In this document: piece by piece, positions 2,154-29,637 of the stretch
Position numbering within the stretch: position 1 is the stretch's first letter
How the letters are laid out: each line of letters begins with the position of its first letter
Origin: Magallana gigas
Lineage: Eukaryota
Assembly (NCBI RefSeq): GCF_963853765.1
Contig: NC_088859.1
Coordinates: 46,438,001 to 46,502,000 of the forward strand
Direction: 5' to 3'
DNA length: 64,000 nucleotides
Program-made: the position numbers and the translations under genes
The notes under the pieces: model-generated
What the model was told of the DNA's origin: nothing
Seen by the model: the letters and a program-made list of their open reading frames with translations, nothing else
Databases searched by the model: none

Positions 2154-5100
2154 CATTCTGAGGTCCTATGATAATAATATCCTTCAATGGTTGTGGTAGA
2201 TTTCTGGAAGCAGATATAATAAAATCCAGCAAAAGATGCTCCATTTATATTCTTTATTGTATGATCTGGCACAAGGAAATGTTCCTGAAATAAGAGGTAC
2301 ATTCATTAATATATACATGTATATTCATGTGTATCATATACAATTCATTAACTACAAAGGACTATATATGGTTTGAGCTTAAAATGGCCCCCAAAAATGA
2401 ACACTGTCATTTTACTGTAATTCTTTGTTTATTTCTACAAATATGCATTTGAAGTTTTGTCATAATTTTCATTTTGATTTTTGTGCCCACAATTTAAAAA
2501 TAGGACATCATAATGTTTACCTTTTCCTACAATTTTCTCATTTTCAGCATAAAACGGCTTGTTTTGAAGCAGTTTTTCTTTAAGGAAACATTGAGCGACT
2601 GCTTGAACAAGCAAATTATTTTCACCAAAGATGTATCTCTCCAATACTTATGAGTGACAAAAAGTTCGTTCTTGTTCAAAGAGTCGCTCTATGTTTCCCA
2701 TTCGAAAAAAGATAAGAAAAATGTCAATGTTTGATTGATTTTGGTTGAATTATAAAAATAGCTTCACTTCTGACGTCATATACTGCAAATGAGTGCATAT
2801 AAATCAAATAAATAGGTGAAAAACATATTTCATGTCAACTCTTTTATAATATAACACAACAAATTAATGTACCTGAATCATTTTAAAAATAGCGAAAAAT
2901 GGGGGCCAAATTTGACTAATACCATATATAGTTCTTTGTATCCTTTTTTATTATTTTCCAATGATGTAAAATTTATCATTGTTATTCAAAATAGAAATTG
3001 TATGGCATTTACATTACCGTACTCAGTGTAATTTTATGAAAAAGCACCTAGGCAAAATTGTATCTCAATTTTTTAAATAATTATTATGAAAACAAAAATG
3101 ATTGCTCTAATAACCTTCCATCTCATGAAAACAAAGTCTGTGTTATTCAAGTCATCATAGTCAAAGCTATCTGAATTGAAGGTTTTGGCAAACTGGAAAA
3201 AGGACAAAAATTTCCCCTGCAAAAAAAAAAAATCAATTTGAAAGTAGATTTAATTTAAAAGCATACAGTATTGTGACAGTGGATTTAGATATTCAAGTTG
3301 AATTGGCAGTGCTTGGTTGATAGCAATTTTGGGCTCTGGTTTTAATTTCACTCCTTTATTATTATAAAAAAATTTCGCCATTTATTTTCTGTCCATCCAA
3401 ACTTTACAAATTACCTTGCACTACTTTCTACAATGATCAATCAGTTACATACTTTTATGTCATTTGCAATGCAAATTCTGATGAAACATTTTTATTGTTT
3501 GCTTTTTAAATAGCTGTCTCCTTCAGCCTAACAAGATTAAAGAGATGTTTCAACAAAAACTTAATTTTTTTGTTTTCATGAATAAAAATAGTTTAAATGC
3601 ACAAAAATCTAAGAAAATTGATATATCAAAGACAGAGATGAGGTAATTATAATCAGTAACTGTAATCAGTTGTTATCAATTACAGATTGCAGAGTAATTC
3701 AATGGTAATCACATCTTCACTAGCCAAAGGTTTTCGGTCCACTTTGCCCCCCATAAACCCTTGGCAGATCTCATTACGAAAACTCGGTGATGCAGTGGCG
3801 TTATCAAGTAGCGAGCAACTTGAGTTGCGTCCATTACATATTTACAGTTTAAGCGAATGAAACAATGGGTAATATACACACGCTATGGCATTAAAATAAC
3901 TTAAAAACACATTGACTAGCGAGAATCGGACATAATTAGCGATGCTATCAAATAGGAATGAAGATATAACCTGGATAAAGCAAGGAATGTTTTATCTATT
4001 GTGTTTCTAGGGACCTGTACCAGGAGTGAAAAAGTTGCTAATATATATAAGCATTAAACCAGGTATCGTCGTCATGAATATTGCGGACAGTAATTAGATA
4101 AAATACAGCTCATTAAATATTCAAAAGCAATAAACAGAGGAGAGACTTATATAGGCAACTTCTCCATGTTTATTTCCCATACTGTATCATGCGAGCCTTG
4201 CATGACAAGTTTGTAAATCTCTGTTCAATCAAATGCAGTAAAATATATTGGTTTTTAAAGTGATCCAGTTAGATCATTGTTAGGGAGACACTGTAATCAA
4301 GCACTTGTGCCTTAACTTGTTTTAAAAAGCACCAAATGTTTTACTCGAAAGATAACACGTGTGTTTCTTTTCAAGTTTATTAATAAGCCCTTGTTTACAA
4401 TGCTCAGCTACTCACATCTACAGTCAATCATAAAACAGAGCTTGTCGAGCTGAGTTTTTGTAATGAGATCTGCCAAGGGTTTATTGGGAGCGGAGTTGAA
4501 ACGAAAACTCTTGGCTATAGTCTGTCCCAAGATATCTTGGATTCACATTTTGCTTAATTGCTTGATATTTATAAATACCTCAGGGTTCAAACGATGTTCA
4601 TTCAAAAGTATAAAAAATTTCAAGATTCCTCAGTCGAAACGCCCCTGTTAGCTTATCAAGTTTTAATACAATGCTAAAAAATGTGATGTCTACGGAGATT
4701 TTGTATTGCTGCAAGCACGGATGATAACGTTAAAAAATAGCGCGATGTATTCCGAGTGTATTACGAATGGATTAAAGATGTAAACATTCCCCATTATAAA
4801 TCTCCGAAAGGAATCTGTTTTCGTTCCTGTGAATTTTTCTGAGTGACAGTTGATAATGTGTCAATGAAATTATCTTGGAAGTTATCCCTTTCAACTATTA
4901 CAAATTTACAATTGCACTTCTTTCACAGGTATGTATATTTTTTTTTTAAATCGTCCAAATGTGCAGCATAAATATCTTTGGACAGACTATAGCAAAGATG
5001 TGGTAATCAGTAATCACCCACTTTGAGTTTAATCATGTATCCATAGATTATCTATAGATTTAATATAAGTACCCAATGCTTTCTGTCCACATCCTCATCG

Positions 5101-24600: not shown

Positions 24601-27600
24601 ACAATGAAGTGCCTTCTTTGGTGATTTATGTAGGTATGAAAGTACGAAGCATAGAGGGGAAAAACTGATTATTTCTACACACTTCAATAAATGAATTTTG
24701 AATTTAAATATACAATTCAAATTAATTTAGTTTGACATAAAAAAAAAAATATACATGTATGCCGGTAATTTTATTTCATTGATTGATAAACCACAGTTAG
24801 CATCATAAGGTGATGGTTAGACATTTTTAATCAGACAAGAACAGTCTGTGGATCCCTTGATATTCTAATATGTATATATGTCTCATTCTAATTATTTTAC
24901 ATTTGTAGGCGTCGTCCTCGCCCGCCCCTGTTTCTGCACAGCCTGCTCCCACGGTGGGGAATCTGATAGACTTGGGCGATGACACATTTGTCCCTAACCC
25001 TCAGCTCGCCCCACAAGTTACAGCACAGATGGCTAACCTTGGTAAAAAAAAAAACCTCTTAATACAAAAAAAAGGATTTGTCTTGGGATTTGTGGGTCTT
25101 ATGCTGCATATAGATAACTGACATGTTTAGATATAAAGTGGACTGTGATTAAAAAATCAATAGAAGTGTAAGGTGCATTGTAAAGGTTTGTTAAGTATAG
25201 TATATTTTGCAGACATAGGAAGCAATTCAACTGCCACTTCAGGCCACAATGATGATGACTTTGATATGTTTGCCCAATCAAGGAAATCTTTTGAGACAAA
25301 CAAACAGGCAATGGGGTGAGTGTACAGGGATGAACTAGTTCTCAGATTGAAGTGAAATTGAATAAATGTACAGTTATAAAATCTAGGAAAAAAAATGAAA
25401 ATTGAAACTTGTAATATTTGTTAAGTGTTACTTTTAAACCAGATCTGTTATACGCCAAGTATTTTACATTAATTAACATATATTGCAGAAGTTACGCAAA
25501 CCAGCAGGAGGACCAGTTTAACAAGGGTGGTTTAGGAACTGTGGTCAACTCCAGAAACAATGTGAGTTATGCTTATAGAAATAATTAGTACATAGGAAAT
25601 ATCTCAGTACAAAGGAAATATCTCAATACACAAACCAAAGCTTTTTTTATGTTTTTGTGTATGGCAAATGCATTTAATATTGAATAATGAAATGCTATGC
25701 ATTTACAGTTTACGAAGGAGGAGGATGTGTTGAAGGTAATTTTGGTGATGTAGTGGTTGGAGTATAGTGTTCATCTGCCTTATTTATTTGCTTAATTTAC
25801 TCATTTTTCTCAGTCAACAGATTGTGTGCTGAATTCTGAAAATTCTTCTTTGTATTTAACAATATCTGTTATTTAACTATTCTCTTGATTATCTAAATTC
25901 AAGGGAAATAATTCATTAAGTGTGCTCTACTGACACTCTTTTCAAGTAACTTTTAATTTACTTTAATTTTTTGCATAATTCAAGAAAAGTCATATGTTAT
26001 TAATATACAAATCAAATGAATTGAATTTTTACAATAGAAGGGGGTGTTTTATGAGATAAAAATTTTGATAATTTTCAAAAAATAAGAAATTATGTTCTTA
26101 TCATACTGAATTACCCTGGTAATTTATTATGAAAAGCTTTGTGAGGTGATATAGCTAGTGACAATGTTAATGTTGTTAACTATTTCCCACTGTTCTTTCC
26201 AACAAAATTGATTAGGTTTTGATGTAAGATGCAATGTTCATCATTTGCAGTTTTTCACTGCTTGTACTAACATTTCTAACAACTTTAAACCATCTTTTCA
26301 TCTACCCTTAGCTTAATTTGGCACTAGGTTCTATAGTTGGTTGAACTAATATGGTAAAAAAAAATCTGGTTATAGCGTAAATAATAAGAATTAGCAGTGT
26401 CATCACATTTGTGATTGGTCCTGTTGGGCCTGATAACCACAATGTTCATTACTCGTAACTTACGCTACTAGTTCTAATCAACACGGTTACGTAGTTATTA
26501 ATAGTAGCAGATTGATTGACACATGTGTATGTTACAGCTAACGAGAGAAGAGGAGGAGGTACTTAAGGTAACACGTCATGCATGTAGCATGGTCACATGG
26601 CCAGTCACACTGGTCAGGTCCATAGTCAAGACGAGAATCACCCACAGAGTTTAACATTGTGTTTTATTTGCATTAACCATGCAGAGTATAAGCAGAGTCA
26701 GTTTTTCACTCACTTTTGAATTGAAGCTAGATTTTTGTTTTATTTTTTTGTTTGTTTAAGATGCAGCTATTTAGGAGTGAGACATTATGAACTTGTGTAC
26801 CCAGATATGTAAATACATGTATTACACATTGTGTGATGAATATATAAATTCAAACTTTGACATTCTGTAGTGCTTGAAATTAATATTAATTTTAACATCC
26901 ATGGAAAATGATATACTAATTCTTTATTTTCAATTATTTTATGTTGTATCATGCATTTATTTAGAAGGGCATGATTTAGTTGACATCTAAACAAACAAAT
27001 ACTATGAAGTCAGGATCTCTTGTTAAAGTATTATTATTTGTCAAATGCTCTGAAAATTCAATTTGTGTAGCATTTTATGAATTGTTGTTCAAAAATTTCT
27101 ATTGGAAAATTGTTTCAATTTTAAGTCTGGGCTATTTTTTAAAAAAAGTTTATAAGTAAAATTTACATTGAACTAAAAATTTACAAATTATAAGATAACA
27201 GAAAATAATACCGGTATATTCTGACAACATTAGACATATTTTGAAGGTTCAAATTGAAACCAATGTATAAAGCTTTCTAAATAATGAATAACAGAGAATT
27301 CAGCATGATGTAAAGAAATAATTTAACAGACTGTCTTGTTCATTAGTGATATACACGAGAAATCTAGGTGACATTTGAAATACTGTGGTTTCATTAATAT
27401 TCAAGGGTATCAATTTTCGTGGAAAAAGTGAAAATCACAGTTTCAAGGATATGTAAATTCGTGGCCAATGACCCTATCAATACAAAATGTTAATAGATAT
27501 TGCACTTCAGTGTACATTAAATTTCGTGGATCAACTTAACAACGAAATCCACGAAAATTGGTATTCAACGAATATTGATGAAACCACAGTACTGTTTGTA

Positions 27601-29637
27601 AATGACTTTTACCAATATGTCCGTCTGAGTTTTATGTTTTGTTTAAGGTAGCCACTGCTTTTTTTTTTTTTGCTGCATGCAGTGTTTGAAGAGGAAATGA
27701 ACTGTGATCTTTGTGATCACAGGATACATGGTGGTTTCTGGTAGTCTTCAGATTATTGTTATGCTGCTAGAATGACAGCCAAAAGCCTTTACAAGCTTTG
27801 GTGACCATGTCAAGGAACACATGGAACCTGTGAAGAAATACATATAAAATACATGTACATGGAACATGTGAAAAAATACATATAAAATACATGGAACATG
27901 TGAAGAAATACATATAAAATACATGTACATGGAACATGTGAAAAAATACATATAAAATACATGGAACATGTGAAGAAATACATATAAAATACATGGAACA
28001 TGTGAAGAAATACATATAAAATACATGGAACATGTGAAGAAGTACATTAAAAAATTACATGGAACATGTAAAGGAATACATATAAAATACATGGAACATG
28101 TGAAGAAGTACATTAAAAAATTACATGGAACATGTAAAGGAATACATATAAAATACATGGAACATGTGAAGAAGTACATTAAAAAATTACATGGAACATG
28201 TAAAGGAACATCTACTTGTCATCGCTACCTTCAGTCTTGTACATGTCTTCTATGTAGATCATGAAATGTTTAGTAGCTAGTTGTGAATGACATTTAGATT
28301 TAGCTCACTCCATGTATGTACATGTACTTTTGAATATTTAGGTACTATAGTTATTACAATTCTTAATTGTTAAAAATTGCGTATATTATTACATGCATAA
28401 CAGATTAATTTAGTATTGATGACTTTAATTTTTATGCCCTGTATATGATTTTTATGGATTTTTTTTGTAGTTACAAGACAAAGAAACTGATTATGATGAG
28501 ATGGAACAGTGGTTAACAGCTGAACAGAAAGCCAGCGTAAGTACATAGATAGACTTGGAACACAAATTAAGAGCTTTTGGGGTTAATAGGTCAAAATGGA
28601 CAAAACAGTTACAGAAACAGTGATAAATGTGAAGGGTTAAAGAGAAGGGCCACCTTAAGAGCTACCAGTACATGTACTGTAGTGTGGGTTACCTACATTG
28701 ACCTTGATAAGCACTCGGCTAGGTCCACATAATATTTTTGAAATTATTTAATAATACACTATTGAGGGTGTTTTATTCTATGTTTCATAATTCTTTTGTT
28801 TTACAGTTGAATGAACATAAAAACCAGCAAAAGGATTCATTATCCAGTTCAGGTAGGCCAAGTAGATATTATATCATTAATATCAGGGCAGTAAAAATCA
28901 GAGACTGTTCATTTAAGGTTGTCCATCCATAACTATCATATTTCATATCTAATAGATTGCAAGCTTAATCATTAAAATCTTAGTGTGGTTTTTAGGAGTT
29001 TATTAAATAATAAAGATTCATCATTGAAAATTAAAAAAAAAAATTATATTTATAAATTTATTGTATGTTGAAGTTAACATTGAAGTCTATGGGAGAAATG
29101 CATTTTTTAAGTATATTTCTTTAGAACAAGCAATTTTCTTACATTTCTCTTGGTAAAAAGTTACAAAAGCTTTCCCTTTCTTCGAATATCCTAAAATAAT
29201 TAATAGTTTACCATACATATTTTCAGAAAGTGATTTTAAAAAATTTTCCTGAAGGGTAGACAACTCTTTAAAAAAAATTTGAAGTGCAAAAAGTTCATTT
29301 AATTGACTACATAATAGTACATACACCCAAGTTTGGTTTATGTCAGCCTCATAATAGCTTTAAAATATGTATTTGATGCATTATTGATTAATCAAAATTG
29401 TTAAATTCGCCTTAGTTAGCAGCGTTTATTACCGAAATTTATGTTTTGATTTGTCATTAACTCTTCAGGGATGTATTTTCAATTCTGAACGAGGGCTGTT
29501 TTCTTTCAGAATTCGATTCATTTCTGGCAGATAGGGCTCAGGCAGCTGACACCCTACCAAGCATAGCAGCTGCCACAGGTCAAAGGTCAAGAAAACTACA
29601 AAAAGATGACGAGGAGAACCCATTATTTGCATTGTAA
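18658..29637 (+). CDS. TOM1L2: TOM1-family endosomal adaptor (VHS-GAT), TOM1L2/TOM1 ortholog
   Basis: Exons 18658-18715, 19460-19544, 19850-19934, 20269-20415, 20500-20634 (VHS: [35 protein letters not shown]), 21873-21926, 24032-24302 and 24388-24539 (GAT: [34 protein letters not shown]), 24909-25041 (NLIDL clathrin box), 25213-25315 (DFDMFAQSR), 25489-25561, optional microexons, 28471-28536 (MEQWL), 28807-28852, 29510-29637 ([10 protein letters not shown]...LFAL*). Confidence 0.94.
20835..21773. mobile_element. Kolobok-like non-autonomous transposon carrying an inverted TOM1L2 exon copy
   Basis: ttaa|agctgcttggcccgatttt ... aaaatcggaccaagcagct|ttaa (TIR with one mismatch, TTAA TSD). Confidence 0.85.
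20975..21252 (-). pseudogene. Inverted genomic copy of TOM1L2 GAT exon 24388-24539 with flanking intron sequence
   Basis: Reverse complement of about 24366-24644, including acceptor, exon, donor and ~100 bp of downstream intron. Flanked by the 27-bp direct repeat tttcaaataatgccaaatttcaatgaa (20943-20969 and 21261-21287). Confidence 0.92.
25709..25735 (+). CDS. Candidate 27-nt TOM1L2 microexon (FTKEEDVLK)
   Basis: tgctatgcatttacag|TTTACGAAGGAGGAGGATGTGTTGAAG|gtaat; phase 0/0. Confidence 0.65.
26538..26567 (+). CDS. Candidate 30-nt TOM1L2 microexon ([10 protein letters not shown])
   Basis: gttacag|CTAACGAGAGAAGAGGAGGAGGTACTTAAG|gtaac; phase 0/0; TGCATG at 26579-26584. Confidence 0.65.
27383..27589. 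mobile_element. Tc1/mariner-like MITE
   Basis: ta|ctgtggtttcattaatattc ... gaatattgatgaaaccacag|ta. Confidence 0.75.
27820..28208 (+). repeat. Intronic minisatellite, 12 units of 32-38 bp
   Basis: catggaac starts at 27820, 27858, 27890, 27928, 27960, 27992, 28024, 28058, 28090, 28124, 28156 and 28190. Confidence 0.95.

What the first reader, a model, noticed from the sequence alone, without database searches (positions are those of the whole stretch)
2154..29637. Four-gene block GID4-ATPAF2-DRC3-TOM1L2 identical in order and orientation to human 17p11.2
Seen: GID4(-) head-to-head with ATPAF2(+), ATPAF2 tail-to-tail with DRC3(-), and DRC3 head-to-head with TOM1L2(+). Established: the same arrangement occurs in the human Smith-Magenis region (TOM1L2, DRC3, ATPAF2, GID4). 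Inference: if this genome is a mollusc, four functionally unrelated genes have stayed linked since the protostome-deuterostome split, plausibly held by two bidirectional promoters and a tight 540-bp convergent junction.
Basis: partly seen in the sequence, partly recalled or inferred. Interest (0 to 1): 0.7.

Follow-up and report, generated by a model that had tools for sequence, protein, structure and literature searches.

The report
Ancient four-gene neighbourhood shared with humans
Four unrelated genes lie side by side in this oyster genome in the same order and orientation as in limpets, birds, mice and humans, so the arrangement is a real relic of early bilaterian gene order, but it is one more example of an already well-catalogued phenomenon.

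Summary
Window 2154-29637 holds four intron-containing genes: GID4(-), ATPAF2(+), DRC3(-) and a TOM1-family gene(+). Each was identified by Pfam or PDB matches and each is single-copy in this 564-Mb ostreid oyster genome.

Three corrections apply:
- GID4's last coding exon lies about 530-590 bp before the window start.
- "TOM1L2" is the oyster's only TOM1-family gene, so it corresponds to vertebrate TOM1, TOM1L1 and TOM1L2 together.
- DRG2 is not adjacent.

The same four genes, in the same order and orientation, were found around DRC3 in a limpet and a bird. Papers give the same order for human and mouse. A sea star and an acorn worm show TOM1-DRC3-ATPAF2, and the fetched DNA ends before GID4 could appear. 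Lingula, amphioxus and Dimorphilus keep only the TOM1|DRC3 head-to-head pair. Trichoplax keeps only DRC3|ATPAF2, and Nematostella keeps none. The block therefore predates the protostome-deuterostome split.

RNA confirms the gene models. It places the DRC3 start no more than about 450 bp from the TOM1 ATG and shows the 540-bp convergent gap almost fully transcribed. The likely cause is interlocked transcription units that leave no harmless breakpoint. This is a new instance of known "conserved ancestral microsynteny".

The scan holds other first-reader microsynteny notes on this genome, none on this block. One follow-up report touching this stretch was withheld.

The parts
2154..5509 (-). GID4 orthologue. 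Coding exons in the window are 5369-5509, 5073-5240, 3115-3216 and 2154-2284. A fifth and last coding exon lies 525-588 bp before the window start.
   Evidence: Pfam Vac_ImportDeg. Human GID4 in the PDB matches at about 96% on exon 2. Splice model; last exon. Single locus in the genome.
5510..5676 (.). Divergent GID4|ATPAF2 intergenic region, a putative bidirectional promoter. It spans 167 bp between the two ATGs and contains CCGGAAGT at 5583-5590 and a CCAAT/ATTGG box.
   Evidence: The transcription starts were not mapped here.
5677..13314 (+). ATPAF2 (ATP12) orthologue with eight coding exons: 5677-5782, 7910-7954, 9743-9888, 11421-11518, 12193-12273, 12578-12690, 12944-13059 and 13168-13314.
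   Evidence: Pfam ATP12. Splice model. Junctions 12690>12944 and 13059>13168 are seen in RNA. Single locus. Exon 1 is not confirmed by RNA.
13315..13854 (.). 540-bp convergent gap between the ATPAF2 and DRC3 stop codons, nearly all of it 3' UTR. Poly(A) signals for ATPAF2 lie at 13340 and 13392. Those for DRC3 (minus strand) lie at 13618 and 13550.
   Evidence: Strand-specific reads show plus-strand RNA up to the 13200-13399 bin and minus-strand RNA from the 13400-13599 bin. Contigs from two RNA runs run unbroken over 13166-14097. Poly(A) signals.
13855..17410 (-). DRC3 (LRRC48) orthologue, coding part, 522 aa. Exons are 17251-17410, 16968-17084, 16662-16828, 16347-16493, 15934-16053, 15723-15835, 15421-15595, 15072-15203, 14715-14909 and 13855-14097.
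   Evidence: PDB 8j07_3 and 9fqr DRC3. 99.8% identical to P0207. All nine junctions are seen in RNA. Single locus.
15596..15722 (-). U12-type AT-AC intron of DRC3 (intron 6). The donor is ATATCCTTT and the branch site TTCCTTAAC lies about 10 nt before the 3' AC.
   Evidence: Sequence. The RNA joint 15595>15723 has GT..AT ends on the plus strand, with 21 reads and 2 contigs. The same position and motifs occur in 7-8 other animals.
18022..18204 (-). Non-coding 5' exon of DRC3, spliced to 17427. It places the DRC3 transcription start near 18.2 kb.
   Evidence: Joint 17427>18022 (CT..AC) in contigs of two RNA runs, with pieces at 18022-18193 and 18022-18204.
18205..18657 (.). Divergent DRC3|TOM1 region of at most about 450 bp, a putative bidirectional promoter. 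It contains CCGGAAGT (minus strand) at 18245-18252 and TGACGTCA at 18631-18638. CpG observed/expected is 1.1-1.4 against 0.47 locally.
18658..29637 (+). The oyster's single TOM1-family gene (VHS + GAT), the positional counterpart of vertebrate TOM1L2. Model exons are 18658-18715, 19460-19544, 19850-19934, 20269-20415, 20500-20634, 24041-24302, 24388-24539, 24942-25041, 25243-25315 and 29469-29637. At least one more exon is likely near 28462-28515.
   Evidence: Pfam VHS and GAT. PDB TOM1 GAT and VHS. Model. The exon 1>2 junction is supported by an RNA contig. Extra exon candidate. Single locus.

Best explanation
This is an ancestral bilaterian gene neighbourhood. [quoted passage not shown] It has been inherited unbroken by oysters, limpets and vertebrates.

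It most likely persists because the four transcription units are physically interlocked:
- Two head-to-head pairs share very short promoter regions: 167 bp between ATGs, and at most about 450 bp.
- The middle pair ends tail-to-tail, with 3' UTRs that fill the 540-bp gap.

Almost no DNA is left in which a rearrangement breakpoint could fall without damaging a promoter or a 3' end. The proteins need not cooperate in function.

Shown here: gene identities, single-copy status, the arrangement in other phyla, the transcript structure and the tight spacing. Inferred: that the tight spacing, and the purifying selection against breakpoints in it, is the cause of retention.
For: Gene identity and copy number:
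- Each gene has one copy in the genome.

Arrangement in other animals (checked by tblastn with my oyster models):
- All four genes, same order and orientation: Lottia and the bird Geothlypis, where the 5' ends of ATPAF2 and GID4 overlap.
- TOM1-DRC3-ATPAF2: Acanthaster and Saccoglossus.
- TOM1|DRC3 head-to-head is kept in all 8 bilaterians sampled with tools (plus the window), with annotated gaps of 0.4-2.1 kb.
- DRC3|ATPAF2 is also present in Trichoplax.

Literature:
- Human and mouse order: PMC2966422 and PMC2990707.
- The C17orf39(GID4)/ATPAF2 head-to-head pair is conserved in human, chicken and Fugu: PMC1487180.

RNA:
- DRC3 has a 5' exon at 18022-18204.
- Coverage across the convergent gap is continuous.

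Promoter signature:
- The ETS-type octamer CCGGAAGT occurs 4 times in 64 kb (0.39 expected).
- Two of those sites fall in the two divergent gaps.
- CpG is enriched in both gaps.
Against: - The block is not obligatory. The DRC3|ATPAF2 junction is broken in Lingula, amphioxus and Dimorphilus. Nematostella has none of the partners beside DRC3.
- The ETS motif is not conserved in the corresponding gaps of other species.
- Co-expression was not measured.
- Transcription starts of GID4, ATPAF2 and TOM1 were not mapped.
- Only one species per phylum was sampled, and only 10 kb on each side of DRC3.
- No arthropod, nematode, sponge or ctenophore was examined.
Confidence: 0.62

Rival explanations
1. 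The block is ancestral, but selection for shared regulation keeps it together. In this reading the four genes form a co-regulated unit, or a regulatory block in which enhancers for one gene lie inside a neighbour. Separation would then mis-express them even if each promoter stayed intact.
For: - Irimia et al. 2012 (PMC3514665) show that many conserved pairs are 5'-5' with short gaps and are co-expressed.
- Both oyster divergent gaps carry the same ETS-type octamer.
- In human the region is one LD/TAD neighbourhood with shared eQTLs for GID4, TOM1L2 and ATPAF2 (PMC5527106).
Against: - None of the four genes is a developmental regulator of the kind that anchors regulatory blocks.
- DRC3 is a ciliary gene while the others are broadly used. 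This is established knowledge; PMC5527106 reports Lrrc48 silent where its neighbours are expressed.
- The motif is not conserved across phyla.
- Three lineages broke the middle junction.
Confidence: 0.25
2. The block is ancestral and retained purely by chance in slowly rearranging genomes, with no constraint of any kind on the junctions.
For: - Molluscs, ambulacrarians and vertebrates are known for conservative gene order.
- Other homologues of 17p11.2 genes lie on the same oyster chromosome, so the whole region evolves slowly.
- The block has been broken several times elsewhere.
Against: - TOM1|DRC3 is intact in 8 of 8 bilaterians, including the fast-evolving Dimorphilus and amphioxus, while the flanking genes differ everywhere.
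- Gaps stay at or below about 2 kb even in a bird.
- Published surveys find only some hundreds of such pairs genome-wide (PMC3514665).
Confidence: 0.1
3. The resemblance is an artefact: vertebrate contamination of the assembly, misassembly, or independent convergent assembly of the same order.
For: Exon-level identity to human GID4 is very high, at about 96%.
Against: - GC is 0.33, and the compact introns and surrounding genes are typical of an invertebrate.
- DRC3 is 87% identical to another oyster against about 47% or less for vertebrates in the same search.
- The stretch is held by 20 runs from 8 studies, including oyster RNA runs.
- The window lies inside a 53.7-Mb chromosome-scale contig.
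- The same block is present in the limpet, and three of its four genes lie the same way in the sea star and the acorn worm.
Confidence: 0.01

Closest known systems
Human 17p11.2 / mouse chromosome 11 B2 segment TOM1L2-DRC3(LRRC48)-ATPAF2-GID4(C17orf39), in the Smith-Magenis region
   Same: The same four gene families occur in the same order (PMC2966422, PMC2990707). The relative orientation is the same as seen directly in a bird. The GID4/ATPAF2 head-to-head pair is documented (PMC1487180).
   Different: - The oyster block spans about 30 kb rather than more than 200 kb.
- The oyster has one TOM1-family gene rather than three paralogues.
- The vertebrate continuation DRG2-MYO15A-ALKBH5-LLGL1 is not adjacent in the oyster. 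DRG homologues are at C7:6.13 Mb and C3.
- Human strand assignments for TOM1L2 and DRC3 rest on my own knowledge plus the bird locus.
Conserved ancestral microsyntenic pairs (CAMPs) of Irimia et al. 2012 (PMC3514665)
   Same: Unrelated, non-paralogous genes are kept adjacent across metazoan phyla. They are enriched for the 5'-5' orientation with short intergenic distance, and the proposed cause is cis-regulatory or promoter constraint.
   Different: This is a run of three consecutive conserved adjacencies with fixed orientation, including one 3'-3' junction. Whether these pairs are in that paper's lists could not be checked, because the supplements are not held.
Microsyntenic block 3064, 'Bilateria novel' (GID4-DRG2-MYO15A-ALKBH5-LLGL1), in Robert et al. 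2022 (PMC8851819, supplementary file 4)
   Same: It shares GID4 and the same human region, and it is dated to the bilaterian ancestor by a 49-genome survey.
   Different: That block extends from GID4 in the opposite direction, and it is not intact in the oyster. ATPAF2, DRC3 and TOM1L2 were not found in the stored part of the file, which is truncated.
HSPD1-HSPE1 head-to-head pair with a shared bidirectional promoter
   Same: It is the textbook case of an ancient 5'-5' pair with a gap under 1 kb (cited in PMC3514665). The architecture resembles GID4|ATPAF2 and DRC3|TOM1.
   Different: HSPD1 and HSPE1 work together in one complex. The four genes here have unrelated functions: a ubiquitin-ligase substrate receptor, an ATP-synthase assembly factor, a ciliary N-DRC subunit and an endosomal adaptor.

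Membership tests
Conserved ancestral microsynteny block (CAMP sense) | The genes compared are orthologues, not paralogues picked by name | tested here: met
   Each of the four has a single locus in the oyster genome. The DRC3 exon hits only DRC3 proteins in 1.8 billion representatives. My models recover the neighbours in other phyla by tblastn. No gene trees were built.
Conserved ancestral microsynteny block (CAMP sense) | The linked genes belong to unrelated families (not tandem duplicates) | tested here: met
   Four different Pfam architectures: Vac_ImportDeg, ATP12, LRR, and VHS + GAT.
Conserved ancestral microsynteny block (CAMP sense) | Adjacency is present in both protostomes and deuterostomes | tested here: met
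   Oyster (window) and Lottia on one side; bird, Acanthaster and Saccoglossus on the other. Human and mouse are from papers.
Conserved ancestral microsynteny block (CAMP sense) | Relative orientation is conserved | tested here: met
   With DRC3 set to +, the order is TOM1(-) DRC3(+) ATP12(-) GID4(+) in oyster, Lottia and bird. The first three lie the same way in the sea star and the acorn worm.
Bidirectional-promoter gene pair | Head-to-head genes with transcription starts less than about 1 kb apart | tested here: inconclusive
   GID4|ATPAF2 ATGs are 167 bp apart. The DRC3 5' exon reaches about 18204 and the TOM1 ATG is at 18658. The exact starts of GID4, ATPAF2 and TOM1 were not mapped.
Bidirectional-promoter gene pair | A shared promoter element, or co-expression of the two genes | tested here: inconclusive
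   CCGGAAGT occurs in both oyster gaps, 4 sites in 64 kb against 0.39 expected. It is not conserved in other species. Expression correlation was not measured.
Genomic regulatory block (GRB) | A developmental regulator as target gene, surrounded by bystander genes that carry its conserved non-coding elements | tested here: not met
   None of the four products is a transcription factor or signalling regulator. Conserved non-coding elements were not searched.
TOM1L2 (the vertebrate paralogue specifically) | One-to-one orthology with TOM1L2, as opposed to TOM1 or TOM1L1 | tested here: not met
   There is only one TOM1-family locus in the oyster. Its VHS exon scores best against TOM1 (53 bits) and lower against TOM1L1 (32 bits), and TOM1L2 is not in the PDB. 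It is a TOM1-family member (VHS + GAT) and a positional counterpart of TOM1L2. No tree was built.
DRC3 / LRRC48 | N-terminal leucine-rich repeats plus a C-terminal coiled-coil region that aligns to N-DRC subunit 3 | tested here: met
   LRR_4 and LRR_9. Residues 373-442 and 148-197 of human DRC3 (8j07_3) align at E 1e-21 and 4e-10. The full-length model is 522 aa, as in other animals.
U12-type (minor) AT-AC intron | An ATATCCTT donor, a TCCTTAAC branch site 10-15 nt before the 3' AC, and a junction used in RNA | tested here: met
   Window 15596-15722 on the minus strand. The junction is read by 21 stranded reads and 2 contigs. The protein across the junction matches P0207.

The most novel reading that the evidence does not exclude
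The block may be a selectively maintained, interlocked expression unit rather than a passive relic. Two short ETS-type bidirectional promoters and a convergent 3'-3' overlap would couple a ciliary gene, a mitochondrial assembly factor, a ubiquitin-ligase receptor and an endosomal adaptor. Its core, DRC3|ATPAF2, would be older than Bilateria, because it is present in Trichoplax. If so, this compact 30-kb oyster locus would be a tractable system for testing whether microsynteny of unrelated housekeeping genes is selected or neutral.
Probability: 0.2. Interest if true: 0.55.

Novelty: new member of a known kind. Interest (0 to 1): 0.35.

Why it matters
The finding gives a clean, RNA-supported example of four unrelated genes whose order and orientation have survived since the protostome-deuterostome ancestor. 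It also gives a first map of where the block broke in other phyla. The head-to-head TOM1|DRC3 junction is never broken in the 8 bilaterians sampled, while the tail-to-tail junction is broken in three. That pattern is what promoter-sharing models of microsynteny predict.

It also anchors part of the human Smith-Magenis region to a compact invertebrate locus. It does not reveal a new kind of system, because hundreds of such ancient pairs and blocks have been catalogued.

Tried and rejected
- **DRG2 beyond the window start: rejected.** The 30 kb upstream (L010-L012) hold repeats and a DPF-like PHD-finger gene, not a DRG. The two DRG-family loci are at C3:2.83 Mb and C7:6.13 Mb. Which one is DRG2 stayed inconclusive, with only a slight preference of the C7 exon for yeast Rbg2.
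- **Neighbourhood look-ups that gave nothing.** Nucella and Montipora were not on record. Owenia was withheld. All 12 look-ups were then used, so arthropods, nematodes, sponges, ctenophores and a second cnidarian could not be examined. GID4 could not be looked for beyond the 10-kb flank in the sea star and the acorn worm.
- **ETS motif as a conserved promoter element: not supported** outside the oyster.
- **PDB search with an ATPAF2 exon: no meaningful hit**. The identity rests on Pfam ATP12.
- **Supplements of Irimia 2012 and Simakov 2013: not held**. Whether these pairs are already listed there is unknown.
- **Full-length GID4, ATPAF2 and TOM1 queries could not be sent to the big protein searches.** Spliced proteins have no reference form, and I did not type them.
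- **First automatic splice join of DRC3 exons 6-7 failed** because the intron is AT-AC. DRC3 exon 1-2 was first mis-joined and then corrected.
- **Vertebrate origin or contamination: rejected** (see rival explanations).

Full report
**What is in the window**

The window is AT-rich (GC about 0.33) and holds intron-containing animal genes. I read stop-free segments and joined them at splice sites.

- GID4 lies on the minus strand with its ATG at 5509. Two of its exons match Pfam Vac_ImportDeg at E 1e-18. Exon 2 matches human GID4 in the PDB at 51 of 53 residues. Its fifth and last coding exon lies 525-588 bp before the first base of the window. I found it after fetching the flanking DNA.
- ATPAF2 lies on the plus strand, from its ATG at 5677 to a stop ending at 13314. 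It has eight exons and matches Pfam ATP12.
- DRC3 lies on the minus strand, from its ATG at 17410 to a stop at 13855. It has ten coding exons. Its best PDB matches are human and mammalian 'Dynein regulatory complex subunit 3'.
- A TOM1-family gene lies on the plus strand, from its ATG at 18658 to a stop ending at 29637. It has VHS and GAT domains, and its best PDB matches are TOM1.

**Orthology and organism**

Six-frame searches of the whole 564-Mb assembly find one locus for each of the four genes. The window is C7:46,438,001-46,502,000. There is therefore no paralogue problem inside this genome.

The oyster has only one TOM1-family gene. It corresponds to vertebrate TOM1, TOM1L1 and TOM1L2 together, and it is only the positional counterpart of TOM1L2.

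A 65-residue DRC3 exon, searched against 1.8 billion representative proteins, found only DRC3 proteins wherever names were available. My 522-aa DRC3 model is 99.8% identical to the transcript-derived protein P0207. It is 86.7% identical to Saccostrea cucullata and 79.5% to Pinctada. RNA runs labelled 'oyster metagenome' hold the stretch.

**RNA evidence**

I laid two stranded poly(A) raw-read runs and two RNA contig sets on 12800-18799.

- All nine DRC3 coding junctions are confirmed.
- ATPAF2 junctions 12690>12944 and 13059>13168 are confirmed.
- The TOM1 exon 1>2 junction is confirmed.
- DRC3 has an extra non-coding 5' exon at 18022-18204, spliced to 17427. The DRC3 start therefore lies at most about 450 bp from the TOM1 ATG.
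- In the convergent gap, plus-strand RNA is seen up to the 13200-13399 bin and minus-strand RNA from the 13400-13599 bin.
- Contigs from two RNA libraries run unbroken from 13166 to 14097.
- Poly(A) signals sit at 13340 and 13392 for ATPAF2, and at 13618 and 13550 for DRC3.

Practically the whole 540 bp is therefore 3' UTR, and the two 3' ends abut or slightly overlap.

**Other animals**

I used named DRC3 proteins as anchors and read the annotated neighbours within 10 kb on each side. I then checked them by tblastn with my oyster models. With DRC3 set to the plus strand:

| Species | Phylum or group | Neighbours of DRC3(+) |
|---|---|---|
| Lottia | gastropod mollusc | TOM1(-), ATP12(-), GID4(+): all four |
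| Geothlypis | bird | All four, same orientation; 5' ends of ATP12 and GID4 overlap |
| Acanthaster | sea star | TOM1(-), ATP12(-); fetched DNA ends before GID4 could appear |
| Saccoglossus | acorn worm | TOM1(-), ATP12(-); fetched DNA ends before GID4 could appear |
| Lingula | brachiopod | TOM1(-); then GID4 on the minus strand, no ATPAF2 |
| Branchiostoma | amphioxus | TOM1(-); then an ABCA transporter |
| Dimorphilus | annelid | TOM1(-); then MRPS10 |
| Trichoplax | placozoan | ATP12(-) only |
| Nematostella | cnidarian | PICK1 upstream; none of the partners |

Papers give the order TOM1L2, LRRC48, ATPAF2, C17orf39, DRG2 for human and mouse (PMC2966422, PMC2990707). They also report the C17orf39/ATPAF2 head-to-head pair as conserved in human, chicken and Fugu (PMC1487180).

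By parsimony the four-gene block existed in the protostome-deuterostome ancestor. The DRC3|ATPAF2 pair may be older.

**How it is probably held together**

The head-to-head TOM1|DRC3 junction is intact in all eight bilaterians sampled with tools, with annotated gaps of 0.4-2.1 kb. The tail-to-tail DRC3|ATPAF2 junction is broken in three of them. The convergent junction is therefore the weak link rather than a clamp.

The pattern fits a model in which very short shared promoter regions cannot accept a breakpoint without damaging a gene. I consider this structural interlocking the most likely cause (confidence about 0.6). Selection for true co-regulation is a rival (about 0.25), and purely neutral survival a weaker one (about 0.1).

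In the oyster both divergent gaps carry the ETS-type octamer CCGGAAGT. There are four sites in 64 kb against 0.39 expected, and two of them fall in these two gaps. Both gaps also show raised CpG. The motif is not conserved in the corresponding gaps of other species, so it supports the promoter character of the oyster gaps but not an ancient shared element.

**What is already known**

Ancient microsynteny of unrelated genes, enriched for 5'-5' pairs with short gaps, is a catalogued phenomenon (Irimia et al. 2012, PMC3514665). A 49-genome survey lists the adjoining block GID4-DRG2-MYO15A-ALKBH5-LLGL1 as 'Bilateria novel' (PMC8851819 supplement).

I found no paper that describes the TOM1L2-DRC3-ATPAF2-GID4 run across phyla. 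The supplements of the main surveys were not available. I therefore rate it a new member of a known kind, of modest interest.

**Side observations**

- DRG2 is not next to the block.
- Homologues of several other 17p11.2 genes lie on the same oyster chromosome: a MyTH4 myosin at 46.60-46.62 Mb, SHMT at 46.87 Mb, TOP3 at 48.27 Mb, a folliculin-family gene at 33.45 Mb, LLGL at 24.96 Mb and a DRG at 6.13 Mb. This is consistent with conserved macrosynteny. Orthology of these genes was not established.
- DRC3 intron 6 is a U12-type AT-AC intron. It is used in RNA and is present at the same position in Lingula, amphioxus, Nematostella, the sea star, the acorn worm, Lottia, the bird and probably Trichoplax. 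It is lost in Dimorphilus.

Noticed in passing
window 15596-15722 (minus strand); L013, L014, L015, L016, L017, L018, L019, L020: DRC3 intron 6 is a U12-type AT-AC intron, with an ATATCCTTT donor and a TTCCTTAAC branch site about 10 nt before the AC. It is spliced in oyster RNA. An intron with the same donor motif sits at the same codon position in Lingula, amphioxus, Nematostella, sea star, acorn worm, limpet, bird and (with a weaker donor) Trichoplax. It is absent in Dimorphilus. A paper search found no text linking DRC3/LRRC48 to minor introns.
   Followed up: partly
window 20975-21239 and 24380-24644: These two stretches form a 265-nt inverted repeat, 97% complementary. An inverted copy of the TOM1 exon that encodes '[23 protein letters not shown]...' sits inside TOM1 intron 5, 3.1 kb upstream of the real exon. 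Another first-reader note reads it as exon capture by a transposon.
   Followed up: no
window 14162-14603: A repeat or hairpin element inside DRC3 intron 9 shows 10-50 times higher RNA depth than the DRC3 exons, on both strands. It has many variant letters and loose ends, so the reads come from many copies elsewhere in the genome.
   Followed up: no
G000:C7:46604440-46620696, C7:46871267-46874479, C7:48272353-48275997, C7:33449792-33450172, C7:24958775-24959330, C7:6129834-6129947: Homologues of other human 17p11.2 genes lie on the same oyster chromosome. A MyTH4-domain myosin sits about 100-120 kb beyond the window end, and an SHMT gene about 370 kb beyond it. TOP3, a folliculin-family gene, LLGL and a DRG lie further off. 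All six families tested have a member on C7, which is about 9.5% of the genome. Orthology with MYO15A, SHMT1, TOP3A, SMCR8/FLCN, LLGL1 and DRG2 was not established.
   Followed up: partly
window 18631-18638; L013 8967; L014 9252: The palindrome TGACGTCA (a CRE-type site) lies within about 30-50 bp of the TOM1 5' end in oyster, Lingula and amphioxus. It is absent from the other species checked. This is possibly a conserved TOM1 promoter element, or chance.
   Followed up: no
window 28462-28515 (plus strand): A short open segment ending '...DYDEMEQWL' matches the Dimorphilus TOM1 gene in the right order. It is probably a TOM1 coding exon missing from my model, so the 421-aa model is incomplete between 25.3 and 29.5 kb.
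   Followed up: partly
L012 8530-8832 and L011 2999-3322 (minus strand; 20-30 kb before the window start): The next recognisable gene upstream of GID4 looks like a DPF/requiem-type double-PHD-finger gene ('[31 protein letters not shown]'). It is not DRG2.
   Followed up: no
L013 16125-18167: In Lingula, GID4 sits directly after DRC3 on the opposite strand from the ancestral arrangement. No ATPAF2 was detected anywhere in the 24-kb locus. This indicates a local inversion together with loss or relocation of ATPAF2.
   Followed up: partly
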